Assembly (NCBI GenBank): GCA_965240325.2
Contig: OZ251236.1
Coordinates: 1,550,001-1,614,000, forward strand
Length of the DNA stretch: 64,000 bases
Source: Rebecca billardiae RCC1528
Taxonomy: Eukaryota; Protista; Haptophyta
Reading direction: 5' to 3'
The notes beneath the pieces are model-generated. The model made no database searches, had not been told where the DNA came from, and worked only from the letters and a program-made list of their open reading frames with translations. Shown here piece by piece: positions 847 through 64,000 of the stretch (the first letter of the stretch is position 1; every line of letters begins with the position of its first letter). The translations under genes and the position numbers were made by a program.

Positions 847-880
<34 letters not shown>

Positions 881-10862: not shown

Positions 10863-11028
10863 CGCCGATCACGCCCGGGCCGCCCCAGCCGCCGCAACGG
10901 ACTTCGGAGTTCGGACTGGATCCCGCCCCGGCCCCCGGAGCGGGTGTGCGCACCAGGCCTTGGCGATCCGCGCGAACACGAATCATCATACGAATCTCGT
11001 GATTGCGACGGCCGCGTCGACACGCGCG
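10863..11028. promoter_or_regulatory. Putative bidirectional promoter between phoD-like and PLMT
   Basis: Only 166 bp separate the two divergent ATGs (10862 on minus, 11029 on plus). No specific motif identified. Confidence 0.5.
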
Positions 11029-13053: not shown

Positions 13054-16000
13054 ATGCGACCGCGCAAGTGGACGCTCACTCAAGCGGCGGTGCTGCTGCT
13101 CGCAGTCGCGCCGGGCACCGTGAATGCGCAGTTCGTGAGCATCGAACGTGAGCAGAAGATCTCGGCCACGTCTGGCGGGCTTGATGCGTCCTCCGTGTCG
13201 GCGGGCGACGAGCTCGGCTGGAAAGGCCTTGCCTTTGTGGGCGACTTGGACGGCGACGGCGTACCCGACGCGGTCGCCGGGCTGCACATGGCGTCGTCCG
13301 CCGATGGCGCAGCACTCGTGCTCTTCCTGCGCGCGAACGGCACCGTCCACACCGAGCAACGCCTTGCGTCCGGCCAGCGCGGTCTGCCCGTCCTCGTGTC
13401 CGCGGGCAAGTTTGGTGCCGGCGTCGCCGCGCTCGGCGACGTTAACAACGATGGCGTGCCAGACGTGGCGATCGGTGCGAGCGAGGCTGGCGGCGGGCGA
13501 GTCTACATGTGCTTCATGAACGCCGACGGCACCGTCAACGCCACCGAGCAGATCGGTCAGGGCTTGGGCGGCTTCACCGGCACGCTCGGCAGCTCGGACC
13601 TGTTCGGGCAAGCGCTGGCTAACGCGGGCGATCTCGACGGTGACGGAAATCTCGAGCTGCTCGTCGGCGCGCCCGGTGACAGCGCGATGTACGTGCTCTT
13701 CACCAACAGCACCGGCACCGTCACCTCGCACACCAAGATTGCGGCGGGCAGCGGCGGCTTGGTCGCAGCCCCCAGCGCCAATGACGTCTTCGGCGAAGCA
13801 CTGGCCGGGCTCGGCGACGTGAACGGTGACGGTGTGCCCGACGCGCTGGTGGGCGCGCCCGGCGACAAGGACGGCGGCAACCAGGCGGGCGCCGTGTACG
13901 TGCTCATGCTCGATGCCACCGGCGCGGTCATCGCCGAGCAGAAGATCACGGAAGGGCTCGTGAACCCGCCCGGTGGCTTTGACCGCTTCGGCTTTGCGGT
14001 GTCAGCACTCGGCGACCTGAATGGGGACGGCGTCGTCGACTGTGCGGTGGGCGCGGAGAGCACGGACGACGGCGTGTCGAACTCCGGCTCCGTGTACATC
14101 CTCCTCCTCACCTCCGCGGGCGCGGTGCTCGATGAGCGCAAGATCAACACCCTCAGCACAGACCTGACGGCCGAGCTGGCATCGGGCGACCATCTCGGGT
14201 CGGCACTGAGCGCGGCGGACGTGGACGCGGATGGGACGGTCGACCTGCTGGTTGGCGCGTGGGGGGACGACGACGGCGGCTCGGACGCTGGAGCGATCTA
14301 CCTGTGGCACCTCAACGCCTGGCAACCGCCGTCGCCACCGCCATCACCGCCACCACCGGCACCACCGCCGAGCCCACCGCCCGCGGCGCTGCTCCCGAGC
14401 CCGCCACCATCGCCGCCGCCATCACCGCCGCCGAGCCCGCCGCCGAGCCCACCGCCGAGCCCGCCGCCCAGCCCGCCGCCCAGCCCGCCGCCCAGCCCGC
14501 CGCCGTCGCCGCCGCCGAGCCCGCCGCCGCCCACTCCGCCACCGAGCCCACCGCCGAGCCCGCCGCCGAGCCCGCCTCCCAGCCCGCCGCCCAGCCCGCC
14601 GCCGCCAAGCCCGCCGCCGAGCCCGCCGCCGAGCCCGCCGCCGTCGCCGCCGCCAAGCCCGCCACCCTCCCCGCCGCCGTCATCACCACATCCCACGCCG
14701 CCACCAAGCCCGCCGCCAACACCACCGCCCTCCCCGCCGCCGAGCCCGCTGCCCCGGAGCCCGCCACCGAGCCCGCCGCCTGCCCCTCCGCCCAGCCCAC
14801 CGCCGAGCCCGCCACCGCCATCGCCACCACCGTCGCCGCCGCCGAGCCCGCCACCCACCCCACCGCCAAGCTCGCCGCCCTCGCCACCGCCCTCGCCGCC
14901 ACCCTCGCCGCCTCCCTCGTCGCCGCCTCCGGTGCCGCCGCCGAGCCCACCTCCAAGCCCGCCTCCGAGTCGACCGCCGAGTCCGCCACCGAGCCCGCCG
15001 CCGAGCCCGCCGCCGCCGAGCCCGCCGCCGAGCCCGCCGCCATCACCGCCACCTTCGCCGCCACCGTCACCGCCGCCGCCGAGTCCGCCGCCGAGCCCGC
15101 CGCCGAGCCCACCACCAAGACCCCCGCCAAGCCCGCCACCGCCATCGCCACCCCCGTCGCCGCCGCCGAGCCCGCCACCCTCCCCGCCGCCGAGTTCGCC
15201 GCCCAGCCCGCCGCCCACCCCGCCGCCCAGCCCACCGCCCAGCCCACCGCCCAGCCCGCCGCCACCGTCCCCTCCGCCATCGCCCCCGCCATCTCCGCCG
15301 CCGTTGCCACCGCCGTCGCCGCCGCCGCCATCACTGCCGCCGAGCCCGCCGCCGAGCCCACCGCCGAGCCCGCCGCCGAGCCCGCCGCCGCCAGGCTCTC
15401 CGCCGAGTCCGCCGCCGAGCCCACCGCCGACTCCGCCACCATCGCCACCGCCGCCGGGCCCGCCGCCGAGCCCGCCACCGTCACCGCTACCGGGCCCTCC
15501 GCCGAGCCCGCCACCGCCATCACCGCCTCCGTCGCCTCCGCCGAGCCTGCCACCGAGCCCGCCGCCGAGCCCGCCGCCATCGCCACCGCCACCCAGCCCG
15601 CCACCACGCCCGCCGCCATCGCCGCCACCAAGCCCACCACCGAGCCCAACGCCGCCGTCCCCACCGCCGTCCCCACCGCCATCGCCGCCGCCGGCGCCGC
15701 CACCCTCGCCGCCGCCGCCGTTGCCGCCGCCGAGCCCGCCGCCGAGCCCGCCGCCGAGCCCGCCGCCGAGCCCGCCGCCGCCAAGCCCACCGCCGAGCCC
15801 GCCTCCGAGCCCACCACCGAGCCCGTCGCCATCGACGCCGCCGCCGAGCCCGCCGCCGAGCCCGCCGCCGAGCCCGCCACCATCACCACCGCCATCGCCA
15901 CCACCGAGCCTGCCGCCGCCATCGCCGCCACCGTCGCCACCGCCGAGCCCGCCGCCGAGCCCGCCGCCATTGCCACCGCCGTCGCCGCCGCCGAGCCCGC

Positions 16001-19000: not shown

Positions 19001-22000
19001 CGCCACCGCCGTCTCCGCCGCCAAGCCCGCCGCCCAGCCCACCGCCATCGCCGCCGCCGAGCCCACCACCGCCGAGCCCGCCGCCATCGCCGCCTCCCTC
19101 GCCACCGCCGGTGCCGCCGCCCAGCCCGCCGCCGCCATCGCCGCCGCCCTCGCCGCCGCCCATCTCTCCACCCTCGCCACCGCCAAGCCCGCCACCGCCC
19201 TCGCCGCCGCCGAGCCCGCCGCCCGCCAGTCCGCCGGCGCCACCACCAAGTCCACCGCCGCCCAGCCCACCACCAACGCCACCGCCGAGCCCGCCACCGT
19301 CGCCGCCGCCGTCGCCGCCGCCACCCGGCGCGCCGCCCTCGCCGCCGCCGAGCCCGCCGCCCCTGCACCCGCCCGCGCCGCCGCCGAGCCCACCACCATC
19401 GCCTCCGCCCTCGCCGCCGCCTCAGCCCCCGCCTCCGCTTCCCCCGCCGAGCCCGCCACCGAGCCCGCCGCCGAATCCACCGCCGTCGCCGCCGCCGCCA
19501 AGCCCGCCGCCCGCCCCGCCGCCCGCCCCGCCCCCGCAGCCACCGCCGTCGCCGCCGCCGCCGGGCTTGCCACCAAGCCCGCCGCCGAGCCCGCCACCCG
19601 CGCCGCCGCCGCGCCCGCCGCCGCCCAGCCCGCCGCCCAACCCGCCGCCGTCGCCGCCGCCGAGCCCGCCGCCCAACCCTCCACCTCCAAGCCCACCGCC
19701 AAGCCCACCCCCTTCGCCGCCGCCGACGCCGCCGCCTCCCGGGCCACCGCCGTCGCCGCCGCCCGCTCCACCGCCACAGGCGCCACCGCCGCCGCCACCG
19801 ACGCCGCCGCCGAGCCCGCCGCCCTCGCCGCCGCCCTCGCCGCCGCCGCTCCCACCACCGCCCAGCCCGCCGCGCCCGCCGCCGTTCGTGCCGCCGCCGC
19901 TGCCGCCAAGCGCGTCCCCGCCGCCGAGCGCGCCGCCGCCGTCCGCGCCGCCGTCGCCCCCTCCGCTCTCCCCGCCGCCCTCTCCGCCCGGCAGCTCGTC
20001 CTACCTCGGCCTCACGCTCGACGCCGAGCCGAGCGCGTACGGCACACAGGCGGCGCAGCGGGCGCTGGCCGACGGCCTCGCGAGCGCGGCGGCCATCCCG
20101 GCCGAGTGGGTGGGCGTGGTCTCCGTGTCGGCCGCGTCGGTGCGCGTGGTGCTGCGCGTCTTCCAGCCGAGCGACCCGGCCGCCCCCGACGCGGCCGCCG
20201 CGCTGCAGGCGCTCTCAGCGGAGGGCCTGGGCGCCTCGCTCGGCGTGGGCGTGCTCGTGACGCCCGAGCCGCTCGTCGCGGGCTGCTCCGAGCCGGGCGC
20301 GGCCAACTACGAGCCCGGAGTCGAAGTGGACGACGGCAGCTGCGTGGCTCACTCGCCGCCGCCGCCGGCGTCGCCGCCGAGCGCGCCGCCGAGCCCGCCG
20401 CCCGCGTCGCCGCCGCCGAGCCCGCCGCCGAGCCCGCCGCCGAGCCCGCCGCCGCCGAGCCCACCGCCCCTTCTGCCACCGCCGCCGCGCGTGGCTCCGT
20501 TCCCACCGCCGAGCCCGCCGAGCCCGCCGCCCGCGCCGCCGCCCAGCCCGCCGCCGAGCCCGCCGCCGGGCGCGCCGCCCGCACCGCCGCCGAGCGCGCC
20601 GCCGAGCGCGCCACCGAGCGAGCCACCGAGCGCGCCGCCGCCGGCGCCACCGCCGTCCTCGCCGCCGCAGCCGCCGCCGCGCCCGCCGCCGCGCCCGCCG
20701 CCGCCGAGCCCGCCGCCGGCCCTGCCGCCGCCGCCTCGCGCTGAGCCGTTCCCGCCGCCTGCGCCGCCAAGCCCGCCGCCGCGCCCGCCTCCGCCGCGCC
20801 CGCCGCCGAGCCCGCCACCGAGCCCGCCGCCCTTGCCGCCGCCGCCACCACCCGGCACGCCCCCGGCGTCGCCGCCCTCGCCACCGCCGCCGCCGCCGCC
20901 GCACGCGCCGCCTCTGCTGCCGCCCTCGCCGCCGCCCTCGCCACCGCCGATGCCGCCGCTGCCGTCGCTGCCACCCTCGCCGCCGCCTCGCCCGCCGCCG
21001 CCGAGTGCGCCGCCCTCGCCGCCGCCGCCGCCGCGCACCGAGCCGTTCCCGCCGCCGGCGCCGCCGAGCCCGCCGCCGAGCCCGCCGCCGAGCCCGCCCC
21101 CGCCGAGCCCACCACCCAGCCCGCCACCATCCCCACCGCCAAGCCCGCCCTCGCCGCCTCCGCTGCCTCCGCCGCGTGATCCGCCGAGCGCGCCGCCGAG
21201 CGCGCCGCCCACGCCGCCGCCCTCGCCGTCGCCGCGCCCGCCGCCTGGCGCGCCGCCGAGCTCGCCGCCGATGCCGCCGCCGAATCTGCCGCCGCACGCG
21301 CCGCCGCCGCACCCGCCGCCCAGTCCGCCGCCTGGCACACCGCCGCCGATGCCTCCGCCCTCGCCGCCGCCTACGCCGCCGCCGCCGAGCCCGCCACCGT
21401 CTCTGCCGCCGCCGCCGCGCACGGAGCCGTTCCCGCCGCCGGCGCCGCCGAGTCCGCCGCCGAATCCGCCGCCGAGCCCGCCACCGCAGAGTCCGCCGCC
21501 GAGCCCCTCTCCGCCTTCGTCCCCCAGCCCGCCCTCGCCGCCTCCGCCGCCTCCGCCGACCACGCCGCCGAGCGAGCCGCCGACCACGCCGCCAGCACCG
21601 CCGCCCACGCCACCGCCACCGCCGCCGCCGCCCGCGCCGCCGCCGCGCCCGCCGCCGGTGCCGCCGACACCGCCGCCGCCGCCGCGCACGGAGCCCTTCC
21701 CGCCGCCGGCGCCGCCGAGCCCGCCGCCAAGCCCACCTCCGTCACCACCGCCCAGCTCGCCACCGCCGCCGCCGCCATCGCCGCCGCCATCGCCGCCGCC
21801 GGGCCCGCCGCCGCACCCGCCGCCGAGCTCTCCGCCGCCGCTGCCGCCACCCAGCCCGCCGCCGCCGCCGCCGCCCGCGATCCGCGTGAGCGTGCTCGGC
21901 GGCAGCCGCGAGGGCGCGCCGCTCGGCTCGGACGACGCGGCGCTCGAGCTCGAGGGTGCGGGCTTTGACAGCCTGGCCGGCGGCGCGTTTGGCGAGATCC

Positions 22001-28914: not shown

Positions 28915-28925
28915 GCTTGGATAAA

Positions 28926-28964
28926 CCCAACGGGATTCTCATACCGGCCCAACGGGATTCTCAT
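28926..28964. repeat. 17-bp direct repeat CCCAACGGGATTCTCAT x2 just downstream of the stop codon (also at 46587-46625)
   Basis: 28926-28942 and 28948-28964 are identical, with a 5-bp spacer. Confidence 0.9.
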
Positions 28965-56100: not shown

Positions 56101-59100
56101 CCGCCGCCGCCGAGTGCGCCGCCCTCGCCGCCGCCGCCGCCGCGCACCGAGCCGTTCCCGCCGCCGGCGCCGCCGAGCCCGCCGCCGAGCCCGCCGCCGA
56201 GCCCGCCCCCGCCGAGCCCACCACCCAGCCCGCCACCATCCCCACCGCCAAGCCCGCCCTCGCCGCCTCCGCTGCCTCCGCCGCGTGATCCGCCGAGCGC
56301 GCCGCCGAGCGCGCCGCCCACGCCGCCGCCCTCGCCGTCGCCGCGCCCGCCGCCTGGCGCGCCGCCGAGCTCGCCGCCGATGCCGCCGCCGAATCTGCCG
56401 CCGCACGCGCCGCCGCCGCACCCGCCGCCCAGTCCGCCGCCTGGCACACCGCCGCCGATGCCTCCGCCCTCGCCGCCGCCTACGCCGCCGCCGCCGAGCC
56501 CGCCACCGTCTCTGCCGCCGCCGCCGCGCACGGAGCCGTTCCCGCCGCCGGCGCCGCCGAGTCCGCCGCCGAATCCGCCGCCGAGCCCGCCACCGCAGAG
56601 TCCGCCGCCGAGCCCCTCTCCGCCTTCGTCCCCCAGCCCGCCCTCGCCGCCTCCGCCGCCTCCGCCGACCACGCCGCCGAGCGAGCCGCCGACCACGCCG
56701 CCAGCACCGCCGCCCACGCCACCGCCACCGCCGCCGCCGCCCGCGCCGCCGCCGCGCCCGCCGCCGGTGCCGCCGACACCGCCGCCGCCGCCGCGCACGG
56801 AGCCCTTCCCGCCGCCGGCGCCGCCGAGCCCGCCGCCAAGCCCACCTCCGTCACCACCGCCCAGCTCGCCACCGCCGCCGCCGCCATCGCCGCCGCCATC
56901 GCCGCCGCCGGGCCCGCCGCCGCACCCGCCGCCGAGCTCTCCGCCGCCGCTGCCGCCACCCAGCCCGCCGCCGCCGCCGCCGCCCGCGATCCGCGTGAGC
57001 GTGCTCGGCGGCAGCCGCGAGGGCGCGCCGCTCGGCTCGGACGACGCGGCGCTCGAGCTCGAGGGTGCGGGCTTTGACAGCCTGGCCGGCGGCGCGTTTG
57101 GCGAGATCCAGTGCGCCTTCACGCGCGCCGACGGCGGCGGGGACGGTGGCGGCCCGCTGCTCTCGGGCGCGACGGTGCTGAGCGACGCGCGGCTGCGCTG
57201 CGCCATGCCCGCCGCCGCCTCGTCCGGCGCCCCCTCCGCCGCGGGCGCGTACACCGTCGGCCTCGCCCTCGGCGCCGTGGGCGCGTCCACGGACGTGGAT
57301 GTCTCCGGGCTCTTCGGCCCGGTCTCGTTTGAGCTGTACGACATGGCGGCCGTGTCGGTGCTCGAGCTGCGCCCGCCGGGCGGGCCGGTGGGCGGCGGCA
57401 CGGCGGTCACGCTCGTGGGCTCGGGCTTTGCCGAGTACGGCGAGGGCCAGCTGTGCTGCGTGCTCGGCGGCGGCGGCTGCGCGGCGGCGGCGACGCTGCT
57501 GCCGCCGTCGGCGGCGGCGCCAACCCTGAGCCGCGCGCGCTGCGTGCTGCCGCCGCCGCTGGGCGGCGCGGCGGGCAGCGTGGCGCTCGAGCTCTCGCTT
57601 GGCGGCGGCAGCGCCGACTCGACCACCGCCTCGGCGCTGCCCTTCCTCGCGTACGACCCGCCCACCCTCGGCTCCGTCAGCCCGGCGAGCGGCGACGCGA
57701 ACGGCGGCACGGAGGTGACGATCGGGGGCGCGGGCTTCGACGCGCTGGCCGGCGGCGCGCTGCTGGCCGTGCGCTTCGGCGACGCGCCCGCGCAGCCGCC
57801 GGCGCGCGTCACGGCGGGCGAGGTTGTCGTCTCCACGCGGTACGGCGCCGCGGGCCGCGCGCAGCTCCGCGTCTCGCTCAACGGCCAGCAGTTCACGCCC
57901 GCGGCCGCCGCGACGCCGCCGCCCGCGGGTGCGCTCGCGTTCACGTTCGTCGGCCTGCACGCGCCCGTGCTCGAGGGTGTGGCGTTCAACGGCGCGGCGA
58001 CGCTGATGGTGCTGCGCTTCGACGCGCAGCCGACCGACCGCGCGGGCATGGGCAGCGGCATGGGCGAGTGCTCGCGCGTCCTCGACGACGACACCGTCGC
58101 GCTGGTCGGCGGCGGCGCGGCCGCGGCCGCGGCCGCGCCGCCGCAGTGCTACTGGACGGACGACTCGACGCTCGTCGCGCGGCTGAGCTCGGCGACGCTC
58201 GTGCGCGCCGGCTCGGAGGTGGGCGTGCGCGCGGGCGCGCTGCGCCCCGAGCAGTGCGGCACGCCGTGCGCCGCCGCCCTCGCCTCCGCCGCCGCGCGCG
58301 CCGCCATCGACGCGGACGCGCCGTGCGGCGAGGGCGTGCCGTGCCCGACGCCTGTCGCAGCCGTGTCGGGCCCGGCGGTGCTCTCGGCGTGCCCGGGCGC
58401 GTCGCTCGCGCTCGACGGCTCCGCCTCGTCGCGCGGCGGCATCGGGCCCGCCGCCTTTGAGTGGCGCGTCGACCCGAGCCGCTCGGCGCGCGCGGCGTCG
58501 CTCAACGCGCGGCTGAGCGCGCTGCCGGCGCGCACGCCTCAGCTCTCGCTCGGCGGGCCCGGTGCGGCCTCGCCGACCGAGCTCGGCGTGAGCGGCTCGT
58601 TCGTGTTCGTGCTGCGCGTCACGTCGTTCCTTGGCGTGCCCTCCGCGCCCGCCGAGTGGCCCGTGTCGCGCGGCGACGGCGCCAGCCCGATCCTCGCCAT
58701 CGACGGCGCGCCCGAGCTGCGCGCGCGCGCCTCCGAGCCCACGCTGCTGAGCGGGCGCGCGGAGCTCGCGCCGTGCTGGCCGCCGAGCTTCGAGCCGGCG
58801 ATGGTGTTCAGCTGGGCGCTCGAGGGCGCGGCGCAGGTGGGCGGCGGCGCGAACGCGAGCAGCAGCGCCTCCGCCGGCGAGCTCGCCGCCGCGACGGACG
58901 TGCTGCTCGCGCGCCTCGCGTCCGCGCGCACCGCGGTGCTGCAGCTGCCGCCGCACTCGCTGGCCGCCGGCTGGGCGTACGACCTGGCGCTCACGGCGAG
59001 GATGGCGGCGGCACCCGCGCAGGCGTCGACGGCACGCGTGCGCGTGCGCGTCGCGCGGCAGCCGCTGCGCGCGGTGATCGCCGGCGGCGACCGCCGCGTG

Positions 59101-62100
59101 CCGAGCTCGCTGCGCCTCGCCGTCGACGCCTCCGCGTCATTCGACCCCGATGCGCCGACGGCCGACGGCGGCGACGGCGGCATGCCGCCGCTGTCGTTCG
59201 CGTGGAGCGTGGCGAACGCGAGCTCGCTCGAGCCGGTGGCTCTCGAGCCGTCCGCGGCGAACGCAAGCGGCGCGCTCTTCGAGCTTGCGCCCGGCACGCT
59301 GCCGCCGGGCGTGTACGCGCTCACCGTGCGCGTGTCCGCGCCCGGCCGCGCGCCCGCGGCCGCGTCGGTGACGGTCGAGGCGGTGCCGGGCGCGGTGCCC
59401 ACGCTCGGCTTCGAGCCGCTCGGGCGGCGCAAGTGGCCGGCGGTGTTCGACCGGAACCCCGAGCGGCTGACTATTAACGCGCGCCTCGACGCCGCCTCGC
59501 GCGCGCTCGAGGCGGCGGGGCAGGCGCGCTTCAGCTACGAGTGGAGCGCGCGGCGCGTGGGCGCGGCCGGCGCGCTCGAGCCCGCCGGTCTCGACCTCGC
59601 GGACAGCGAGCGGGTGACCACGACGGGCGCGGCGCTGCGCACGGTCGCGATCCGCAGCGGCGCGCTCGCGCCCGGTGCGACGTACGCATTCCGCCTTGCC
59701 GTGCTCGGCGGCGCGCAGCCCGCGTACACGGAGGTGCGCGTCACGATCAATCGGCCGCCGTACGGCGGAGGGCTCGAGGTGGCGCCGGCGTCGGGCGTGG
59801 CGCTGCAGACGAGCTTTGCGCTGTACGCGGCGGGGTGGGCGGAGGACGACGAGGAGGACCTGCCGCTGAGCTACGCGTTCTCGCACGCGCCGCTCGGCAC
59901 CGACGCCGTCGCCGCCGTCGCCGCGCTCGGCGCCGCCTCCGCCTCTGCCTCGGCGAGCGCGCTTCTCCCCGCGGGCAACCGCACGCTCACCGTCAGGGTG
60001 GCGGACGCGCTCGGCGGCGCGGCGCACGCGCACGCGGCCGTGGCCGTCGCGCCGCCCGGCGAGGGCGCGGGGCTACTCGACTCGGTGCTCACGCGCGCGT
60101 ACGCCGCGGTCGCGACGGGCGCGGCCGAGACCGCCACGCAGCTCGTGAGCGCCCTCGCCGACGCGCTTGACGCGACGCCCGCGGGCGGCGACAACGCCAC
60201 CGTCGCCTCGGCCACGCTCGCTCAGCTGCTCGAGCTCACGGCGGGCGCGGCGGAGGCGTCCGCGCCGACCGCCGAAGCACGCGCGGCGAGCGCGTCCGCG
60301 CTCGCCGCCGTGCTCGAGGCCGCGCCGCCCGGCGCGTTCGACGCCTCCGCGCAGACCGCGGGCCTCGAGCAGGTCGCCGCCCTCGCGTCGCAGTCGGCCG
60401 CGTCGGGCGTCGACGGACCGACCGCGGCCGCGCTGCTGCGCGCGGCGGACGCGGCGCTCTCCGCCGACACCGACGCCGACGCGCCGCTGAGCGCGGCGGA
60501 GGCGGAGGCCGTGGGCGGAGCGGCGACGAGCGCGGTGGGCGCGCTCGCCATCGCGCTGCTCGCCGGCGCCGTGTCGGGCGAGGCGCCCTTCGAGGCCGTG
60601 GGCAAGGCCATCAACGTGAGCGCGACGCGTGCGGACGCGGGCGCGCTCGGCAACATCACGCTGCCCGGGCCGGGCGGCGCGGGCTCGGTGGGCGTGCCGG
60701 CGAGCGTGTTCGGCGGCGTGCCGCTCGAGCTGCTCGAGGGCGGCGTCGACGTCGTGCTCTGGTCCTCGGCGCGCAACGTGCACGGCGACCCGTCGACGCA
60801 GGCGAACGGCACGGCCGTGGCGTCGGGGCTGGTGACGCCCGTCTTCTCCGTCACGCTCTACTCGGCGTCGGCCGGGCTGGCGCTCACCATCTCCGACCTG
60901 CCGGACGAGGGGCGCGTGCTGATCGAGGTGCCCGGGCTCGAGGGCGCGGGCGGCGCGGGCGAGTGGGGCTGCGTGTGGTGGGACGAGGGCGCGAGCGCGT
61001 GGCTCGACGACGGCTGCGAGACGGTGGTCGCGCGTGCGGACGACGGCTCGCTCGCGCGCTACTGCGCGTGCACGCACCTGACCGACTTTGCGGGCGTGGC
61101 CGTGCCGACGGACGCGGACGCGGCGCGCACCGAGGTGGTCGAGTTCAACATCAACACGCTCTCCCTTGATGACGCCGCTGCAGCCGTCGGCGTCGGCTCC
61201 GGCCCCGTCCTCGCGCGCAACCCGTACATCTTCTGGCTGGTGGTGGCGATGAGTGCCGGCTGCGGACTCAGCGTGGCGCTGTTCGGGGCGCGCGACTTGC
61301 GCGACCACGCGCGGCGCAAGGAGCGCATCCGGCGGCTGCTCGCGAGCGAGGCCGGGCCCGCCGGCGGGCTGCCGGCCTCGCCGGCCTCGCCGGCCAAGCC
61401 CTCTCTCTTCCAGCGCCGCGCGGCCAAGCTCCAGGCGGAGGAGGACGCCCTGTTTGGCGGCTCACCGTGGCGGCCCGCGCCCGCCGACGCGCCCGCCGCC
61501 GTCGGCACGCACAGCCGGCCCGCCTCCTCCTCCGTCCCGGGGCCGCGCTTGGTGGCGCCGGCGGACGGCGGGGACGCGGGCGGGAGCGTGGCTCGCGCGC
61601 CGGCCCCTCTCGCCTCCATCTCGCCCGAGGGCAGCTTCGCACAGCGGCAGCCGCCCCAGCTCTCGCCGCGGCGCGGCAGCGACGGCGCCGCTAGCCGCGG
61701 CGGCGCGGAGGCGCTCGGCTTTGCCGACAGGCTCGAGGCGCGGCTCGACGACCTCGACGACCTGGTGGACGAGACGAAGCGGCGCGCGGCGCTCACGATG
61801 CAGAAGTACGCGCGCGGGCGCAAGGCGCGCGCCCTTGTCGACGAGGCCTCGCCCCAGTTCCGCGAGCGCAAGGCGCGCGCCTCGGACCGCACGCGCGACC
61901 ACTCGCTGACCAAGCTCGTGCGGCTCGTGGGCGAGAGGCTGAGCACAGACCACTCGCTGCTCGGCATCTGGTTCGCCGACCCGGAGGACGCGAAGCGCGC
62001 CGAGCTGGCGCAGATCTTCTGGAACATCGCGATGCTCGGCCTCGTGATCACGTGCATGCTCTACGACGCGAGCGGCGGGCCTCCGGACGCGTCGGCGGCG

Positions 62101-64000
62101 CCGAGCGTCTCGCTGCTGAGCGCGGTGCTCACGGCGCTTCTCACCGCGGCCCTCTCGTTCCCCGCGCTCGCGCTCTTCCGGCTGCTCTTCCGCTGGGGGT
62201 ACGGCCGGCGCTCGGCGCCGCTCTCGAAGCGCGTGTTCGCCACGTTCCTCCGCGCCGAGCTCGCGCAGCGCGAGCGCGAGCGCGCGCCCTTCTCCACCGC
62301 CGTCAAGACGAGCGTGCGCACCGGCGCGTACCTGCGGCCCGCGCTGCCGCGCACCAACTCGGACCGGCGCGGCGACGGCGGCGCGCTGCGCGCCGCCGCG
62401 CCCGCCGACCTCGAGCTCGCGCGCGAGTTCGCGCGGCGCGCGTCGATCGAGGCGGAGCGCTCCTCCATGCCGAGCATGCCCGGGCTCGCGCCGGTCACGC
62501 TGCCCGGCATGCCCGGCCGCTCGTCGCCGCGCGCCAAGCCGCGGCCGCCGCCGGCGGCGGGCATGACGGTGCGCCGGCCGGGCGGGCCCCGCGCCACCGG
62601 CCAGCTGCCGCCGAGCATGGCAGCGTCGATGGCGGCGACGGCGGCGGTGGCGGCGGCGGCGGGCGCTTCGGAGGGCGAGCGCACCGACGCGCCCGCCGCG
62701 GCCACGGCCGCCAAGCCGGGCAGCCTCTTCGCGCCGCGGGCGGTGGCCGTGCCGAGTGCCGACGCGTTCAAGCAGGCGCGAGTCACGCCCGTGCCCACCG
62801 CGGGCGCGCTCGACCCCGGCTCGTTCGGCCGGCACAGGAAGTCGGACGAGGACGAGTTCGAGGCGAGCGGCAGCTTCAACCAAGCGTCGTCCGAGCGCGC
62901 CGCCCGGCGCGCGGTCGCCGCGTCGCTCAGCGTCTCGCTCCGGGGCACGAGCGCGCACGCGGAGGCGGAGCGCGTGGCCGCGGCCGAGCCGCCGTCCGCG
63001 CTCGGCCTCGTGCGCGACTTTGCCGACGTGGCGTCGAACCGTCACGGCCGCTCGCCGCACCCCGGCTCGCCGCCGCTGAGGCGCGATGACGCGCCGCTCA
63101 CGCCCAGCGGCCTCGCGGGTCAGCGCCGCCCGCACTCGCGCCCCTCCTCGGCATCGTGCGCCGCCATCTCCGCCGCGTCCACCCCGCGTGCGAGCGCAGC
63201 AGACGGCGAGGAGGCGGGTGCGACCGAGGAGGCGGAGGCGGCGATGCGCACGAGCATTAGCGAGGTGCTGCCCACGCCCCCGCCTAGCCCGCCGCCGCCG
63301 GGCGGTCCGGCGTTCTCGTTCAAGACGGGGCAGGTCCCCGCGCCCACCGACCTGCCGCCCGCCGCCGGTCCCGCCGCCGCTGCTGCGGAGGAGGAGGCGG
63401 AGGGCGGCGGTCTGGACGAGCAGACGGTCGCGCTGCTCAAGCTCAAGTTCGAGGCGTTCGACGCGGACGACAACGGCTCGGTGGACGGCACCGAGTTCGG
63501 CGCGCTGCTCGAGTCGCTCGGCTTCCGGCTGCGCCCGCGCCGCGTCAAGCAGCTCGCCTCGGAGCTGGACACCAACGGCAACGGGCTGATCGGCTTCGAC
63601 GAGCTGTGCGACTGGTACGAGAGGATGGTCGCGGACGAGGCCGCAAAGGAGGCGCGCCGCGCGGCGGGCTGGCAAGGCCGCGTGCGCCGCGTGCTGCGCA
63701 GGCTGACGCCGCCGCCACTCGTCAAGCTCTTGCTCGCGTGGCTGGCGATGTGGGCCATCTTCGTCGTGCTCGCGCTGCTCGCGGTCGCGTACGCGCTCAC
63801 GTTTGGCGCGCAGCAGACGCGCTGGCTCCTCTTCAGCTGGACGTTCGCCGAGGTGCAGACGCTCGGGCTGGAGGAGCCGGTCATCATCGCGATCACCGTG
63901 CTCGCGCCCATCCTCTTCGACCGGCTGCTCTCGCAGGGCGGCGCGACGGGCGAGGCGATCAACGAGCTGCTCGCGACGACCGTCGCGACGGCCGTCACCG
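47119..64000 (+). CDS. Giant polycystin-1-like surface receptor, copy 3 (head type B), 3'-truncated by the window; stop predicted at ~64023 (~5634 aa)
   Basis: Absent from the ORF track because its stop lies outside the window. Colinear with copy 2 with offsets 17694, 17445 and 17448, all differing by multiples of 3. The window ends at ...ELLATTVATAVT. Confidence 0.87.
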   Translation, partial: MRVPQPVLLAAVLLAALPATRAQTSPPPSPPPSPPPSPTAVVLGQTKISATQGGLAQALQDGDEFGTAVASLGDVDGDGVPDAFVGAPWDAINANIGGAGYVLLMNAEGTVKAETRIAEQEGGFTESFSGQAHFIGGSAAGLGDLDGDGVPDMLMAQGDKAGSTIWTLFLNTDGTVKSYVKIAPGEGDLADLGTDKFGNTVAVLGDVDGDGVVDALVGAGRRDTQSAFVLFLRTDGSAKGYQEISEAAGGLAASPFVNGTWGNAVCAAGDVNGDGIPDAAVGDEKYEDGGLKYGALYVLMLHRNGTVKAEAFISKDELSLLAAGHKLGSACEGLGDLDGDGVPDLAVGAKEAGSGEQGGVFILNLNSDGSVKASAEISQGVGGLSASGLDELDQFGSGLGFLGDLDGDGSPELMVGARWDDDGFDKAGAVYVLTLATPPSSPKPPPSPPPSSPPPSPPPSPPPSPPPPSPPPSPPPSPPPPKAPPSPPPSPPPTPPPSPPPSPPPSPSPPKPPPSPPPSPPPSPPPSPPPSPPPSPPPSPPPSPPPSPPPPKPPPSPPPSPPPSPPPSPPPSPPPSPSPPKPPPSPPPSPPPTPPPSPPPSPPPNPSPPSPPPSPPPSPPPSPPPSPPPSPPPSPPPPSPPPSPPPSPPPSPPPSPPPSPPPSPPPSPPPSPPPSPPPPSPPPSPPPSPPPSPPPSPPPPSPPPSPPPSPPPSPPPSPPPPTPPPSPPPTPPPSPPPSPPPPSPPPSPPPAPPPSPPPSPPPPSPPPSPPPSPPPSPPPSPPPSPPPSPPPSPPPSPPPPSPPPSPPPSPPPSPPPSPPPPSLPPSPPPSPPPSPPPSPPPPSPPPSPPPSPPPSPPPSPPPPSPPPSPPPSPPPSPPPSPPPPSPPPSPPPSPPPSPPPSPPPSPPPSPPPSPPPSPPPSPPPSPPPSPPPSPPPSPPPSPPPSPPPSPPPPSPPPSPPPSPPPSPPPSPPPPSPPPSPPPSPPPSPPPSPPPPTPPPSPPPTPPPSPPPSPPPPSPPPSPPPAPPPSPPPSPPPPSPPPSPPPSPPPSPPPSPPPSPPPSPPPSPPPSPPPPSPPPSPPPSPPPSPPPSPPPPSPPPSPPPSPPPSPPPSPPPPSPPPSPPPSPPPSPPPSPPPPSPPPSPPPSPPPSPPPSPPPPSPPPSPPPSPPPSPPPSPPPSPPPSPPPSPPPSPPPSPPPSPPPSPPPSPPPSPPPSPPPSPPPSPPPPSPPPSPPPSPPPSPPPSPPPPSPPPSPPPSPPPSPPPSPPPPTPPPSPPPTPPPSPPPSPPPPSPPPSPPPAPPPSPPPSPPPPSPPPSPPPSPPPSPPPPSPPPSPPPSPPPSPPPSPPPPSPPPSPPPSPPPSPPPSPPPSPPPSPPPSPPPSPPPSPPPSPPPSPPPSPPPPSPPPSPPPSPPPSPPPSPPPPSPPPSPPPSPPPSPPPSPPPPTPPPSPPPTPPPSPPPSPPPPSPPPSPPPAPPPSPPPSPPPPSPPPSPPPSPPPSPPPSPPPSPPPSPPPSPPPSPPPPSPPPSPPPSPPPSPPPSPPPPSPPPSPPPRPPPSPPPSPPPPSPPPSPPPSPPPSPPPSPPPPSPPPSPPPSPPPSPPPSPPPPSPPPSPPPSPPPSPPPSPPPSPPPSPPPSPPPSPPPSPPPSPPPSPPPSPPPSPPPSPPPSPPPSPPPPSSPPSPPPSPPPSPPPSPPPPIPPPSPPPSPPPSPPPSPPPPTPPPSPPPTPPPFPPPSPPPPSPPPSPPPAPPPSPPPSPPPPLPPPSPPPSPPPSPPPSPPPSPPPSPPPSPPPSPPPPSPPPSPPPSPPPSPPPSPPPPSPPPSPPPSPPPSPPPSPPPPSPPPSPPPSPPPSPPPSPPPPSPPPSPPPSPPPSPPPSPPPPSPPPSPPPSPPPSPPPSPPPPSPPPSPPPTPPPSPPPSPPPPSPPPSPPPSPPPSPPPSPPPPSPPPSPPPSPPPSPPPSPPPPSPPPSPPPSPPPSPPPSPPPPSSPPSPPPSPPPTPPPSPPPPSPPPSPPPTPPPSPPPSPPPPSPPPSPPPSPPPSPPPSPPPPSPPPSPPPTPPPSPPPSPPPPSPPPSPPPSPPPSPPPSPPPPSPPPSPPPSPPPSPPPSPPPPSPPPSPPPSPPPSPPPSPPPPSPPPSPPPSPPPSPPPSPPPPSPPPSPPPSPPPSPPPSPPPPSPPPSPPPSPPPSPPPSPPPPSPPPSPPPTPPPSPPPSPPPPSPPPIPPPSPPPAPPPSPPPPSPPPSPPPSPPPSPPPSPPPPSPPPSPPPAPPPSPPPPSPPPSPPPSPPPSPPPSPPPPSPPPSPPPSPPPNPPPSPPPSPPPSPPPAPPPSPPPPSPPPSPPPSPPPSPPPSPPPPSPPPSPPPSPPPVPPPSPPPPSPPPSPPPISPPSPPPSPPPPSPPPSPPPASPPAPPPSPPPPSPPPTPPPSPPPSPPPSPPPPGAPPSPPPSTPPLHPPAPPPSPPPSPPPSPPPQPPPPLPPPSPPPSPPPNPPPSPPPPSPPPAPPPAPPPQPPPSPPPPGLPPSPPPSPPPAPPPRPPPPSPPPNPPPSPPPSPPPNPPPPSPPPSPPPSPPPTPPPPGPPPSPPPAPPPQAPPPPPPTPPPSPPPSPPPSPPPLPPPPSPPRPPPFVPPPLPPSASPPPSAPPPSAPPSPPPLSPPPSPPGSSSYLGLTLDAEPSAYGTQAAQRALADGLASAAAIPAEWVGVVSVSAASVRVVLRVFQPSDPAAPDAAAALQALSAEGLGASLGVGVLVTPEPLVAGCSEPGAANYEPGVEVDDGSCVAHSPPPPASPPSAPPSPPPASPPPSPPPSPPPSPPPPSPPPLLPPPPRVAPFPPPSPPSPPPAPPPSPPPSPPPGAPPAPPPSAPPSAPPSEPPSAPPPAPPPSSPPQPPPRPPPRPPPPSPPPALPPPPRAEPFPPPAPPSPPPRPPPPRPPPSPPPSPPPLPPPPPPGTPPASPPSPPPPPPPHAPPLLPPSPPPSPPPMPPLPSLPPSPPPRPPPPSAPPSPPPPPRTEPFPPPAPPSPPPSPPPSPPPPSPPPSPPPSPPPSPPSPPPLPPPRDPPSAPPSAPPTPPPSPSPRPPPGAPPSSPPMPPPNLPPHAPPPHPPPSPPPGTPPPMPPPSPPPTPPPPSPPPSLPPPPRTEPFPPPAPPSPPPNPPPSPPPQSPPPSPSPPSSPSPPSPPPPPPPTTPPSEPPTTPPAPPPTPPPPPPPPAPPPRPPPVPPTPPPPPRTEPFPPPAPPSPPPSPPPSPPPSSPPPPPPSPPPSPPPGPPPHPPPSSPPPLPPPSPPPPPPPAIRVSVLGGSREGAPLGSDDAALELEGAGFDSLAGGAFGEIQCAFTRADGGGDGGGPLLSGATVLSDARLRCAMPAAASSGAPSAAGAYTVGLALGAVGASTDVDVSGLFGPVSFELYDMAAVSVLELRPPGGPVGGGTAVTLVGSGFAEYGEGQLCCVLGGGGCAAAATLLPPSAAAPTLSRARCVLPPPLGGAAGSVALELSLGGGSADSTTASALPFLAYDPPTLGSVSPASGDANGGTEVTIGGAGFDALAGGALLAVRFGDAPAQPPARVTAGEVVVSTRYGAAGRAQLRVSLNGQQFTPAAAATPPPAGALAFTFVGLHAPVLEGVAFNGAATLMVLRFDAQPTDRAGMGSGMGECSRVLDDDTVALVGGGAAAAAAAPPQCYWTDDSTLVARLSSATLVRAGSEVGVRAGALRPEQCGTPCAAALASAAARAAIDADAPCGEGVPCPTPVAAVSGPAVLSACPGASLALDGSASSRGGIGPAAFEWRVDPSRSARAASLNARLSALPARTPQLSLGGPGAASPTELGVSGSFVFVLRVTSFLGVPSAPAEWPVSRGDGASPILAIDGAPELRARASEPTLLSGRAELAPCWPPSFEPAMVFSWALEGAAQVGGGANASSSASAGELAAATDVLLARLASARTAVLQLPPHSLAAGWAYDLALTARMAAAPAQASTARVRVRVARQPLRAVIAGGDRRVPSSLRLAVDASASFDPDAPTADGGDGGMPPLSFAWSVANASSLEPVALEPSAANASGALFELAPGTLPPGVYALTVRVSAPGRAPAAASVTVEAVPGAVPTLGFEPLGRRKWPAVFDRNPERLTINARLDAASRALEAAGQARFSYEWSARRVGAAGALEPAGLDLADSERVTTTGAALRTVAIRSGALAPGATYAFRLAVLGGAQPAYTEVRVTINRPPYGGGLEVAPASGVALQTSFALYAAGWAEDDEEDLPLSYAFSHAPLGTDAVAAVAALGAASASASASALLPAGNRTLTVRVADALGGAAHAHAAVAVAPPGEGAGLLDSVLTRAYAAVATGAAETATQLVSALADALDATPAGGDNATVASATLAQLLELTAGAAEASAPTAEARAASASALAAVLEAAPPGAFDASAQTAGLEQVAALASQSAASGVDGPTAAALLRAADAALSADTDADAPLSAAEAEAVGGAATSAVGALAIALLAGAVSGEAPFEAVGKAINVSATRADAGALGNITLPGPGGAGSVGVPASVFGGVPLELLEGGVDVVLWSSARNVHGDPSTQANGTAVASGLVTPVFSVTLYSASAGLALTISDLPDEGRVLIEVPGLEGAGGAGEWGCVWWDEGASAWLDDGCETVVARADDGSLARYCACTHLTDFAGVAVPTDADAARTEVVEFNINTLSLDDAAAAVGVGSGPVLARNPYIFWLVVAMSAGCGLSVALFGARDLRDHARRKERIRRLLASEAGPAGGLPASPASPAKPSLFQRRAAKLQAEEDALFGGSPWRPAPADAPAAVGTHSRPASSSVPGPRLVAPADGGDAGGSVARAPAPLASISPEGSFAQRQPPQLSPRRGSDGAASRGGAEALGFADRLEARLDDLDDLVDETKRRAALTMQKYARGRKARALVDEASPQFRERKARASDRTRDHSLTKLVRLVGERLSTDHSLLGIWFADPEDAKRAELAQIFWNIAMLGLVITCMLYDASGGPPDASAAPSVSLLSAVLTALLTAALSFPALALFRLLFRWGYGRRSAPLSKRVFATFLRAELAQRERERAPFSTAVKTSVRTGAYLRPALPRTNSDRRGDGGALRAAAPADLELAREFARRASIEAERSSMPSMPGLAPVTLPGMPGRSSPRAKPRPPPAAGMTVRRPGGPRATGQLPPSMAASMAATAAVAAAAGASEGERTDAPAAATAAKPGSLFAPRAVAVPSADAFKQARVTPVPTAGALDPGSFGRHRKSDEDEFEASGSFNQASSERAARRAVAASLSVSLRGTSAHAEAERVAAAEPPSALGLVRDFADVASNRHGRSPHPGSPPLRRDDAPLTPSGLAGQRRPHSRPSSASCAAISAASTPRASAADGEEAGATEEAEAAMRTSISEVLPTPPPSPPPPGGPAFSFKTGQVPAPTDLPPAAGPAAAAAEEEAEGGGLDEQTVALLKLKFEAFDADDNGSVDGTEFGALLESLGFRLRPRRVKQLASELDTNGNGLIGFDELCDWYERMVADEAAKEARRAAGWQGRVRRVLRRLTPPPLVKLLLAWLAMWAIFVVLALLAVAYALTFGAQQTRWLLFSWTFAEVQTLGLEEPVIIAITVLAPILFDRLLSQGGATGEAINELLATTVATAVT
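48430..55098 (+). repeat. Extensin-like shaft of copy 3 (~2223 codons)
   Basis: Marker gcctgcccct at 49365, 50187, 51009, 51534 and 52356 (spacings 822, 822, 525, 822), i.e. 249 bp shorter than copy 2 in the third unit. Confidence 0.93.

What the first reader, a model, noticed from the sequence alone, without database searches (positions are those of the whole stretch)
13054..64000. Array of giant 'head-on-a-pole' receptors: integrin-like FG-GAP head, extensin shaft, and a polycystin-1 base with its own Ca2+ sensor
Seen: each ORF joins six FG-GAP/DxDxDG repeats, ~2,400-2,800 Pro-rich residues, 3 IPT domains, REJ, an intact GPS, five hydrophobic helices, an IQ motif and two EF-hands. Established: REJ-GAIN/GPS-TM is the polycystin-1/suREJ layout; FG-GAP propellers are ligand-binding heads in integrin alpha; SP3/SP4 repeats form hydroxyproline-rich rods in extensins and Chlamydomonas wall proteins and agglutinins. 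Inference: a long-reach adhesion or recognition receptor (mating, prey, surface or pathogen contact) coupling head binding or tension to Ca2+ signalling. I do not know a characterised protein with this combination, but I cannot search to confirm that.
Basis: partly seen in the sequence, partly recalled or inferred. Interest (0 to 1): 0.92.

Follow-up and report, generated by a model that had tools for sequence, protein, structure and literature searches.

The report
Giant stalked REJ-GAIN surface receptor genes
Three tandem 16-17 kb intronless genes of a very GC-rich alga, probably a pavlovophyte haptophyte, each encode a calcium-binding propeller head on a predicted 0.75-0.9 micrometre proline-serine rod, anchored by a polycystin-like REJ/GAIN module and a novel five-helix base with calmodulin-type motifs; no characterised protein with this layout was found.

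Summary
Three same-strand ORFs (A 13054-28914, B 29425-46575, C 47119 to the window end) each join:
- a signal peptide;
- six FG-GAP/DxDxDG repeats;
- about 2,400-2,800 Pro/Ser-rich residues, interrupted by a 119-aa globular island;
- IPT domains, REJ and a GAIN domain with an intact GPS (HL/T);
- five hydrophobic helices, an IQ-consensus motif and an EF-hand pair.

The shaft is under protein-level selection. The order shaft-island-shaft-tail recurs in a second organism.

The tail is a family found here only in Pavlovales haptophytes and unnamed environmental sequences. All members are annotated as hypothetical, and none carries FG-GAP.

"Polycystin-1 base" is only half right. REJ and GAIN/GPS are present. 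PLAT, the 11-TM layout and the channel domain are absent, and the protein ends just after the fifth helix.

Stalk and base are about 99.5-100% identical among the copies. Head A is only 40% identical to heads B and C, so different heads sit on a homogenised stalk.

The closest functional analogues are Chlamydomonas Mstax and the cleaved SAG1 agglutinin. I rate it a new variant of known kinds: a long-reach adhesion or mechano-receptor or membrane-anchored hair. Its function is inferred, not shown.

The parts
13054..28914 (+). Gene A: complete giant ORF, from the signal-peptide Met to the stop. The mechanical ORF starts at 12862.
13054..13128 (+). A: predicted signal peptide (MRPRKW...TVNA)
   Evidence: hydrophobic segment; sequence
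13129..14325 (+). A: head with six FG-GAP repeats, each carrying a DxDxDG Ca2+ loop. It is only 40% identical to heads B and C.
   Evidence: Pfam; loops; integrin alpha PDB hits; identity
14326..19995 (+). A: shaft 1, 1890 aa, 95% Pro+Ser. SPPP units form a 21-aa (63-nt) super-repeat.
19996..20352 (+). A: 119-aa globular island, tentatively SEA-like, followed by a Cys...NY...DDGSC motif
   Evidence: homologous island in L003 (E 4e-12); AlphaFold and Foldseek; no Pfam hit
20353..21876 (+). A: shaft 2, 508 aa, more varied Pro-rich sequence with five PPPPRxxPFPPP motifs
21877..22851 (+). A: IPT/TIG region. Two units are significant in Pfam; a third is seen by eye.
23821..25044 (+). A: REJ domain
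   Evidence: Pfam E 1.1e-43
25315..25983 (+). A: GAIN domain (modelled part) ending in the GPS. The predicted cleavage site HL/T lies before nt 25972.
   Evidence: Pfam GPS; motif; Foldseek hits to aGPCR GAIN structures
26113..26184 (+). A: TM1, followed by a basic cytosolic stretch
26689..26721 (+). A: IQ-type motif MQKYARGRKAR on a long predicted helix
26896..27081 (+). A: TM2-TM3 hairpin, with conserved FWN..ML.LVI.C.LY and ITA...PAL motifs
28327..28509 (+). A: EF-hand pair with two canonical loops
   Evidence: Pfam; Foldseek calmodulin and centrin hits
28600..28827 (+). A: TM4-TM5 with the conserved W...QTL..EEP motif. The protein ends 29 aa later.
28915..29424 (.). A-B spacer, 510 nt, GC 0.55. 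The equivalent B-C spacer is 46576-47118.
29425..46575 (+). Gene B: complete. It has the B/C-type head and a 2309-aa shaft 1. From the island to the stop it is about 100% identical to A.
47119..64000 (+). Gene C: cut by the window end about 7 codons before the stop. Its head is 99.4% identical to B and its tail 99.1% identical in amino acids to A and B.

Best explanation
Each gene encodes one secreted, N-out membrane glycoprotein built as a tether or hair. At the tip is a Ca2+-binding FG-GAP beta-propeller head that binds a ligand. Below it is a Ser-Pro3/4 shaft. This is inferred to be hydroxylated and O-glycosylated into a stiff polyproline-II rod. At 0.31 nm per residue it would be roughly 0.6-0.7 um long. 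A small SEA-like island and a second shaft of about 0.16 um follow. IPT, REJ and GAIN domains then connect the rod to the membrane.

The GAIN domain is predicted to self-cleave at HL/T. The whole ectodomain would then be held non-covalently on a five-helix membrane fragment. Pull or ligand binding at the head would be transmitted to the GAIN/GPS junction, with strain or shedding of the ectodomain. The membrane fragment would sense this.

The cytosolic IQ motif (calmodulin docking) and EF-hand pair (direct Ca2+ binding) tie the base to Ca2+, either as regulator or as read-out.

Recombination within the repetitive shafts keeps stalk and base identical among the copies while letting different heads sit on them.

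Shown: domain content and order, consistent topology, family conservation, coding status, and head divergence. Inferred: glycosylation and rigidity, cleavage, ligand, signalling output and cellular location.
For: Domains:
- Pfam hits and motifs.
- The GAIN fold and EF-hand lobes are recovered by AlphaFold plus Foldseek.

Single coding unit:
- SPPP is encoded by more than 50 different 12-mers.
- Ser is encoded by both AGC (226) and TCN (155) codons.
- There is no Met plus signal peptide ahead of the IPT region.
- GC3 is 0.94-0.96 through the tail, and the spacers are AT-richer.

Conservation:
- The tail order GPS-TM1-IQ-TM2-TM3-EF-TM4-TM5 is kept at 25-45% identity in about 24 representatives with E<1e-30.
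- Shaft-island-shaft-tail is found in L003, from an organism with GC 66%.
- A shaft also runs off the contig start in L001.

Heads versus stalk: 40% against 99.5-100% identity.

Analogues: Mstax, SAG1 cleavage, and a male-gamete REJ-GPS-TM protein in Ectocarpus.
Against: - No transcript, protein or localisation data exist for these genes.
- The organism is not identified. The best database relative of the neighbouring PhoD gene is 47% identical.
- The five-helix base has no structural or sequence relative of known function, so no output mechanism is established.
- The IQ motif is below the Pfam threshold.
- Prolyl hydroxylation and glycosylation of SPPP in haptophytes is assumed from green-algal and plant precedent.
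- Head-bearing relatives were not found, because contigs break inside the shafts. FG-GAP plus shaft plus tail is therefore documented only in this window.
- Near-identical 9-kb repeats could in principle be inflated by assembly.
Confidence: 0.55

Rival explanations
1. A purely structural, membrane-anchored surface fibre, such as a flagellar or body hair or a scale or coat tether. Like the axial protein Mstax of the Chlamydomonas mastigoneme, it would have no receptor function of its own. The base would serve only as an anchor and the Ca2+ motifs would regulate trafficking or shedding.
For: The blueprint is the same as Mstax: distal globular domains, a long Hyp-type shaft and a multi-TM base. 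The predicted length is similar to a mastigoneme stem. The shaft is homogenised in sequence and variable in length.
Against: The GAIN/GPS, IQ and EF-hand modules are conserved across all family members, including those with no shaft. That points to a signalling or regulated core rather than a simple anchor. The divergent heads suggest ligand specificity. The base is not PKD2-like.
Confidence: 0.2
2. A true polycystin-1 orthologue that pairs with a PKD2-type channel, as the reader's 'polycystin-1 base' implies.
For: REJ (E 1e-43) plus GAIN/GPS directly ahead of the first TM helix is the polycystin-1/suREJ layout. The sequence after the cleavage site (TDFAG..PTS) resembles a tethered peptide.
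Against: No PLAT domain was found between TM1 and TM2 at E<=10. There are five helices, not eleven. No PKD_channel hit was found. No polycystin or TRP structure was hit by profile or by fold. The C-terminus is conserved and short.
Confidence: 0.1
3. A gamete or self/non-self recognition molecule of the agglutinin type. This is a special case of the best explanation. The heads would be mating-type or allele-specific ligands, and the cleaved ectodomain would be shed on contact, as with SAG1.
For: Head divergence of 40% on an identical stalk. SAG1 is cleaved into a fibrous agglutinin plus an integral membrane fragment. REJ-GPS-TM proteins are gamete-specific in sea urchin and Ectocarpus.
Against: There are no expression data. 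Sexual cycles in Pavlovophyceae are poorly documented (my own knowledge). B and C differ by only 3 aa and 2 synonymous sites in the head, too few for a selection test.
Confidence: 0.1
4. An artefact. The long ORFs would be read-through in 80-85% GC DNA, or head and tail would be separate genes joined by a non-coding CCG-rich repeat, or the array would be an assembly duplication.
For: High GC yields many long spurious ORFs in all frames here. The shaft is open in several frames. The copies are nearly identical over 9-11 kb.
Against: - Ser is encoded by two unrelated codon families, and third codon positions are the most variable.
- Homologous shaft-island-shaft-tail occurs in another organism.
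- The tail has no signal peptide of its own.
- The spacers have clearly lower GC.
- The copies differ in shaft length, carry 39-42 SNPs and have one entirely different head.
Confidence: 0.05

Closest known systems
Pavlovales REJ-GPS-EF-hand proteins: Diacronema lutheri KAG8462819.1 and KAG8461221.1; Pavlovales sp. CCMP2436 KAJ1636386.1, KAJ1635852.1, KAJ1633484.1 and others
   Same: These are true homologues of the tail, at about 26-45% identity. They share the order (IPT)-REJ-GAIN/GPS-TM1-IQ-TM2-TM3-EF pair-TM4-TM5 and the same short C-terminus.
   Different: All are uncharacterised. The annotated models are 900-2150 aa with no FG-GAP head. The D. lutheri locus examined (KAG8462819.1) has a signal peptide directly ahead of the ectodomain and no shaft.
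Polycystin-1 / suREJ / PKDREJ family
   Same: A REJ domain followed by GAIN with an HL/T GPS immediately before the first TM helix. A large modular adhesive ectodomain.
   Different: No PLAT, no 11-TM or channel-like domain, and no PKD Ig repeats or C-type lectin. Five helices with IQ and EF-hand motifs inserted in the cytosolic loops.
Chlamydomonas Mstax, the mastigoneme axial protein (bioRxiv 10.1101/2024.12.24.630281)
   Same: A giant single polypeptide with distal globular binding domains at the N-terminus, a long Hyp-type linear shaft of similar length, and a multi-TM base plus a cytosolic part.
   Different: Mstax has lectin domains rather than FG-GAP. It has Hyp11-(X2Hyp)n-Hyp12 repeats rather than SPPP. 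Its TM region is PKD2-like, and REJ or GAIN is not reported. No sequence homology was tested or seen.
Chlamydomonas plus agglutinin SAG1 (PMC4362204)
   Same: A fibrous Hyp-rich adhesion glycoprotein made as one precursor. It is cleaved into an extracellular agglutinin and an integral membrane C-terminal fragment, and it is linked to signalling and shedding.
   Different: It comes from a different lineage. No REJ/GAIN, FG-GAP, IQ or EF-hand is reported, and the cleavage mechanism differs or is unknown.
Adhesion GPCRs
   Same: The GAIN fold and autoproteolytic GPS (Foldseek hits to Gpr126, latrophilin, BAI3 and GPR56). A mechanosensitive tethered-ectodomain logic.
   Different: No secretin-like 7TM. 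The base here has five helices.
Integrin alpha subunits
   Same: FG-GAP propeller repeats with DxDxDG Ca2+ loops (PDB hits E 1e-12 to 1e-7).
   Different: All six repeats carry Ca2+ loops. There are no thigh or calf domains, no single-pass TM with GFFKR, and no beta subunit is implied.

Membership tests
Polycystin-1 (PKD1-type) | REJ domain | tested here: met
   Pfam PF02010, E 1.1e-43, covering 40-452 of 452 profile positions
Polycystin-1 (PKD1-type) | GAIN domain with a GPS (HL/T) just before TM1 | tested here: met
   Pfam GPS E 1e-5. The motif is invariant in the family. Foldseek hits GAIN structures at E 6e-5. Cleavage itself was not tested.
Polycystin-1 (PKD1-type) | PLAT domain in the first cytosolic loop | tested here: not met
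   No PLAT hit at E<=10 in the TM1-TM3 segment. The loop is modelled as disordered plus the IQ helix.
Polycystin-1 (PKD1-type) | 11 TM helices, the last six polycystin/TRP channel-like | tested here: not met
   Five hydrophobic segments. No PKD_channel hit. No polycystin or TRP hit by family profile or by fold. The C-terminus is conserved 25-30 aa after TM5.
Broad REJ family (suREJ/PKDREJ-like) | REJ plus GPS plus at least one TM helix | tested here: met
Adhesion GPCR | Secretin-like 7TM after GAIN | tested here: not met
   No 7tm_2 Pfam hit. Five helices. No significant GPCR 7TM match: the only whole-receptor entry in the Foldseek list is weak (inactive CD97, rmsd 14.8 over 333 columns), and the A5 profile gives only chance-level neuropeptide Y receptor hits at E 1.7-2.3.
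Integrin alpha | FG-GAP beta-propeller | tested here: met
   Pfam E 3.8e-32; PDB integrin alpha hits. The blade number (six or seven) was not resolved.
Integrin alpha | Thigh and calf legs, and a single TM helix with a GFFKR tail | tested here: not met
   No Integrin_alpha2 Pfam hit. The head is followed directly by the shaft.
Extensin / algal HRGP rods | Long Ser-Pro(3-4) repeats | tested here: met
   359-469 SPPP units per shaft 1, 95% Pro+Ser
Extensin / algal HRGP rods | Prolyl hydroxylation and arabinosylation; polyproline-II rod | not testable with these tools
   Needs mass spectrometry, glycan analysis and EM
Mstax-type mastigoneme axis | MHR repeats (Hyp11-(X2Hyp)n-Hyp12) and a PKD2-like TM region | tested here: not met
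   The repeat here is (SPPP)4SPPPP. The base is not PKD2-like.
Calmodulin-binding IQ motif | IQxxxRGxxxR on a helix | tested here: inconclusive
   The consensus is met with Met for Ile, and it is kept in 10 of 21 family sequences scanned. The family profile hits IQ regions of RSP23 (E 0.0013), Sp17 and myosins. Pfam IQ scores only 8.2 bits.
EF-hand pair | Two canonical 12-residue Ca2+ loops | tested here: met
   Pfam EF-hand_7 E 3.5e-10; loops; calmodulin and centrin fold hits
SEA domain (the island) | A roughly 120-aa alpha/beta sandwich next to O-glycosylated stalks | tested here: inconclusive
   The model has pLDDT 68 and a beta-alpha-beta-beta-alpha-beta order. The best Foldseek hits are the IA-2 ectodomain and dystroglycan at E 2e-3, TM 0.47-0.6. 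No Pfam SEA hit.

The most novel reading that the evidence does not exclude
The five-helix IQ/EF-hand base, conserved in Pavlovales and unrelated to polycystin or GPCR folds, would be a new kind of GAIN-gated membrane signalling unit, for example a Ca2+-regulated channel or scaffold that oligomerises. With the micrometre-long glycosylated rod and exchangeable propeller heads, it would form a previously unrecognised class of sensory 'hair' receptor. It could correspond to a fine surface or flagellar fibre of these algae.
Probability: 0.2. Interest if true: 0.85.

Novelty: new variant of a known kind. Interest (0 to 1): 0.62.

Why it matters
GAIN/REJ receptors are central to animal mechanosensation (polycystins, adhesion GPCRs), but their origins and their non-animal forms are hardly studied. 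Here GAIN/REJ is wired to a different membrane base with built-in Ca2+ and calmodulin motifs, and to a rod of near-micrometre predicted length. That gives a natural system for testing force transmission to a GAIN domain.

It also extends the Mstax and SAG1 theme, a Hyp-type glycorod on a membrane anchor, from green algae to haptophytes. And it offers candidate genes for glycofibrils of the kind now being seen by cryo-EM of environmental samples (PMC11725842).

The pattern of different heads on a homogenised stalk suggests a simple recombination route to diversifying surface specificity.

Practically, it shows that such genes are systematically missed or truncated. Assemblies break inside the shafts, and annotators stop there.

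Tried and rejected
- Exact look-up of the neighbouring PhoD product: not on record.
- Word-indexed search with the full-length protein, tail region: no hit among 2940-9360-aa proteins.
- Tail alone: one metagenome relative and two weak Aureococcus REJ proteins. This first suggested a pelagophyte. I dropped that idea once the exhaustive search gave only Pavlovales names.
- PhoD search for organism identity: best hit 47% and unnamed. The species stays unknown, and it is not the annotated D. lutheri assembly.
- The search for related loci with the single protein: nothing.
- The search for related loci with the GPS alignment: 57 loci, mostly short or distant. None carried an FG-GAP head similar to the window's heads.
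- Sequence search of the REJ-GAIN region against PDB: only E about 0.9. The fold search was needed.
- Profile A1 against PDB: swamped by EF-hand proteins, so it was redone without them.
- The CCMP2436 locus has a 3.2-kb N gap just upstream of the truncated model, so it is uninformative.
- Literature searches for this architecture and for pavlovophyte hairs or knob scales: nothing relevant.
- A dN/dS test on the copies: too few differences.
Full report
**What is there**

The window is extremely GC-rich, 64-86% in 2-kb windows, and looks like compact eukaryotic nuclear DNA. Upstream of the finding lie:
- a UBR-type E3 ligase ORF;
- a small IQ-containing membrane protein;
- a PhoD-like phosphatase on the minus strand;
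- a PEMT-like methyltransferase.

From 12.9 kb onward there are three giant + strand ORFs:
- A, 12862-28914 (5350 aa);
- B, 29320-46575 (5751 aa);
- C, open from 46972 to the window end.

The probable starts are the Met codons ahead of clear signal peptides at 13054, 29425 and 47119. By alignment, C lacks only about 7 codons and its stop. The genes are separated by AT-richer spacers of 510 and 543 nt (GC 0.55), against GC3 of 0.94-0.96 throughout the tail.

**Checking the observation**

Pfam confirms these domains in A, and the same set in B:
- FG-GAP, E 3.8e-32;
- IPT/TIG, E 2e-15, with two significant units and a third seen only by eye;
- REJ, E 1.1e-43;
- GPS, E 1e-5;
- an EF-hand pair, E 3.5e-10.

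Further details hold up as well:
- Each head has six DxDxDG loops at 62-68-aa spacing. It matches integrin alpha propellers in the PDB down to E 1e-12.
- After the GPS (C-x-C-x-H-L-T) there are five hydrophobic segments, at A residues 4418-4441, 4679-4700, 4709-4740, 5247-5282 and 5297-5322.
- An IQxxxRGxxxR-type motif (MQKYARGRKAR) lies between TM1 and TM2. Two canonical EF loops lie between TM3 and TM4.
- With the N-terminus outside, this topology places both Ca2+-related modules in the cytosol. The stretch after TM1 is strongly basic.

So the description is accurate. There are two refinements. The shaft is interrupted by a 119-aa globular island. The third IPT unit and the IQ motif are motif-level calls only, since Pfam scores the IQ at 8 bits.

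**Is it one real protein?**

High GC makes long spurious ORFs common here, so this needed testing. Six points support a single coding unit.
1. In the shafts, SPPP is written with more than 50 different 12-mers. Ser is encoded by both AGC (226 times) and TCN (155 times) in A. The third codon position is the most variable. TRF finds 12-nt and 63-nt periods at only 67-68% matches. This is an old repeat maintained at the amino-acid level, with a 21-aa super-repeat (SPPP)4SPPPP, and not a recent CCG microsatellite.
2. The tail has no Met plus signal peptide of its own, and the head has no anchor or stop.
3. GC3 stays at 0.94-0.96 even in the low-complexity cytosolic loops, so I see no hidden introns.
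4. A relative from another organism (L003, Logan SRR30664515, GC 66%) has one ORF open to the contig start. It reads S(P)4 shaft, a PPPPRTEPFPPP motif, a homologous island (32% identity, E 4e-12), a second Pro-rich stretch, extra modules, then IPT, REJ, GPS, TM helices and EF-hands.
5. The ORF carrying the best metagenome relative (P0001, L001) also opens into an SPPP shaft at the contig edge. Assemblies evidently break inside the shafts, which explains why no full-length relative is in the protein databases.
6. The C-terminal alignment shows that all relatives end 25-30 aa after TM5. The stop at 28912-28914 is therefore the true end, and no downstream channel exon is missing.

**What family is it?**

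An exhaustive HMMER search used the last 1199 residues. It found about 24 representatives at E<1e-30 and 140 at E<1e-10, with the best at about 40% identity. Every named member is from Pavlovales haptophytes:
- Diacronema lutheri: KAG8462819.1 and KAG8461221.1;
- Pavlovales sp. CCMP2436: at least seven proteins;
- one MMETSP transcript.

The rest are unnamed metagenome or Logan contigs. They are annotated as 'hypothetical', 'EF-hand domain-containing' or 'REJ domain-containing'.

The core (IPT)-REJ-GAIN/GPS-TM1-IQ-TM2-TM3-EF-TM4-TM5 is shared. The region N-terminal to it varies, and none of the annotated members carries FG-GAP.

D. lutheri has 73% GC and 45% single-exon genes (PMC8379373), which matches the window's character. 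But the window's own proteins are not in the collections: the PhoD best hit is 47% identical and no tail hit is much above 40%. The source is therefore probably an unannotated pavlovophyte or a close relative. This is an inference.

**The base is not polycystin-1**

An AlphaFold model built with the family alignment has mean pLDDT 61.6. The GAIN beta-sandwich, most TM helices and the EF pair score about 80-95 (TM2 about 70-75), and the loops are disordered. Foldseek against the PDB returns two kinds of hit:
- GAIN domains of Gpr126, latrophilin, BAI3, GPR56, CELSR1 and CD97, at E 6e-5 to 1e-3 over about 220 columns;
- calmodulin and centrin lobes.

It returns no polycystin or TRP structure. 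Its only whole-receptor entry is a weak match to inactive CD97 (rmsd 14.8 over 333 columns).

A profile of TM1-IQ-TM2-TM3 hits mainly IQ-motif proteins in the PDB: RSP23 at E 0.0013, then Sp17, CFAP91 and myosins. The rest are chance-level hits (E 0.5-5.5) such as coiled-coil proteins and neuropeptide Y receptors. No PLAT is found at E<=10. Thus REJ plus GAIN/GPS is polycystin/suREJ-like, but the defining PLAT and 11-TM channel-like part are absent. The five-helix IQ/EF base has no characterised relative.

**The island**

The island model has pLDDT 68 and a beta-alpha-beta-beta-alpha-beta order. Its best fold matches are the SEA-like ectodomain of IA-2 and dystroglycan, at E 2e-3 and TM 0.47-0.6. 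This is a tentative SEA-like assignment, and it fits a domain embedded in an O-glycosylated stalk.

**The array: different heads on one stalk**

From the island to the stop, A and B differ by 5 nt and one 3-nt indel in about 9 kb. C differs from them by 39-42 nt. Near-identity extends about 1.5 kb (A/B) and more than 4 kb (B/C) up into shaft 1, and across the spacers.

Heads B and C are 99.4% identical. Head A is only 40% identical to them and has no DNA similarity, although it has the same six-repeat plan. The length of shaft 1 differs: 1890, 2309 and 2226 aa.

The simplest reading, which is inference, is unequal crossing-over or gene conversion within the repetitive shafts. This would homogenise stalk and base and could place different heads on them. 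The heads also have lower GC3 (0.85-0.90) than the homogenised part (0.96). That would fit GC-biased conversion.

**How it probably works**

These steps are inferred from the known behaviour of the domain families:
- The propeller head binds a ligand in a Ca2+-dependent way.
- The SP3/4 shaft becomes hydroxylated and glycosylated and forms a polyproline-II rod. At 0.31 nm per residue it would measure 586-716 nm, plus 157 nm for shaft 2.
- GAIN self-cleaves at HL/T, leaving the ectodomain non-covalently attached.
- Tension or binding is sensed at the GAIN-membrane junction by the five-helix fragment. Its state is coupled to Ca2+ and calmodulin through the IQ and EF-hand motifs.

Precedents for the overall design are:
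- Chlamydomonas Mstax: about 8000 aa, with lectin domains, a Hyp-repeat stem of about 660 nm and a PKD2-like TM region (bioRxiv 10.1101/2024.12.24.630281);
- the SAG1 agglutinin, which is cleaved into a fibrous adhesin and an integral membrane fragment and is shed during signalling (PMC4362204);
- REJ-GPS-TM proteins implicated in gamete recognition in Ectocarpus (PMC4700764);
- linear tetrapeptide-repeat glycofibrils seen in pond water (PMC11725842), which show that such rods exist in nature without known genes.

**Verdict**

It is not a polycystin-1 and not an integrin or an adhesion GPCR. It is a new variant that combines known modules (FG-GAP head, HRGP-type rod, REJ-GAIN) with an uncharacterised, Pavlovales-restricted five-helix IQ/EF-hand base.

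I found no paper describing this architecture. Function, modification, cleavage and location are untested, and the source organism is unidentified.

Noticed in passing
window 3-6341 (+): A UBR/PRT6-type E3 ligase ORF runs off the window start (Pfam PRT6_C and UBR1-like wing). Near its C-terminus an odd Arg/Pro/Leu-rich stretch sits between a Cys-rich cluster and a conserved-looking end. It may be an intron read through in frame.
   Followed up: no
window 8442-10862 (-) and 10687-11664 (+): A PhoD-like phosphatase with a C-terminal hydrophobic anchor (Pfam E 2.7e-64). Its best database relative is only 47% identical and unnamed. Its 5' end overlaps the mechanical start of a PEMT-like ORF on the other strand, so one of the two start codons is probably further in.
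   Followed up: partly
window 6743-7897 (+): A small ORF with one hydrophobic segment and a weak IQ motif (Pfam E 0.0017, below the cut-off). A second IQ-bearing membrane protein sits next to the array.
   Followed up: no
window 13054-14325, 29425-30732 and 47119-48426 versus 19996-28911: The heads have GC3 of 0.85-0.90. The homogenised island and tail, and the neighbouring genes, have 0.93-0.96. This would fit GC-biased gene conversion in the homogenised part, or a different history for the heads.
   Followed up: partly
window 14411-19873 (and the B and C shafts): The shaft has a 63-nt, 21-aa super-repeat, (SPPP)4SPPPP, at only about 67% DNA matches. Pro codons include about 20% CCA, and shaft GC3 (0.72-0.83) is below the level typical of the other coding regions in the window.
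   Followed up: partly
window 20353-21876; L003 about 1640-1700: The motif PPPPR(V/A/T)(A/E)PFPPP occurs five times in shaft 2. It recurs just before the island in the L003 relative. It is a conserved punctuation of the rod with no known meaning.
   Followed up: no
window 20280-20352; L003 about 2040-2100: The island ends in a conserved GC-x5-A-x-NY-x-P-x4-DD-x-SC motif that Pfam does not recognise.
   Followed up: no
L003 about 2330 onward; L001 416 onward (P0001 N-terminus): The relatives carry three or more repeats of a module of about 95 aa ending in LCY-x-F, between the rod and the IPT domains. The window genes lack these modules, and Pfam gives no hit.
   Followed up: no
L042 (Ga0314689_10000887), ORF 2-5200: A more distant protist relative (GC 59%) alternates Pro-rich linkers with small Cys-containing globular domains. 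A GPS (CACDHLTDFA) and several TM helices follow. The Pro-rich stalk plus GAIN theme is therefore wider than Pavlovales.
   Followed up: partly
L004 (Pavlovales sp. CCMP2436, MU631356.1) 5170-9070: A 3.2-kb run of N lies directly upstream of the truncated gene model KAJ1636386.1, which starts inside REJ. This would fit an unassembled shaft.
   Followed up: no
window 14231-63675, other frames and minus strand: There are dozens of ORFs of 300-2400 aa in the other five frames over the array. They are compositional by-products of 80-85% GC and of the CCG-type repeat. None was treated as a gene.
   Followed up: partly
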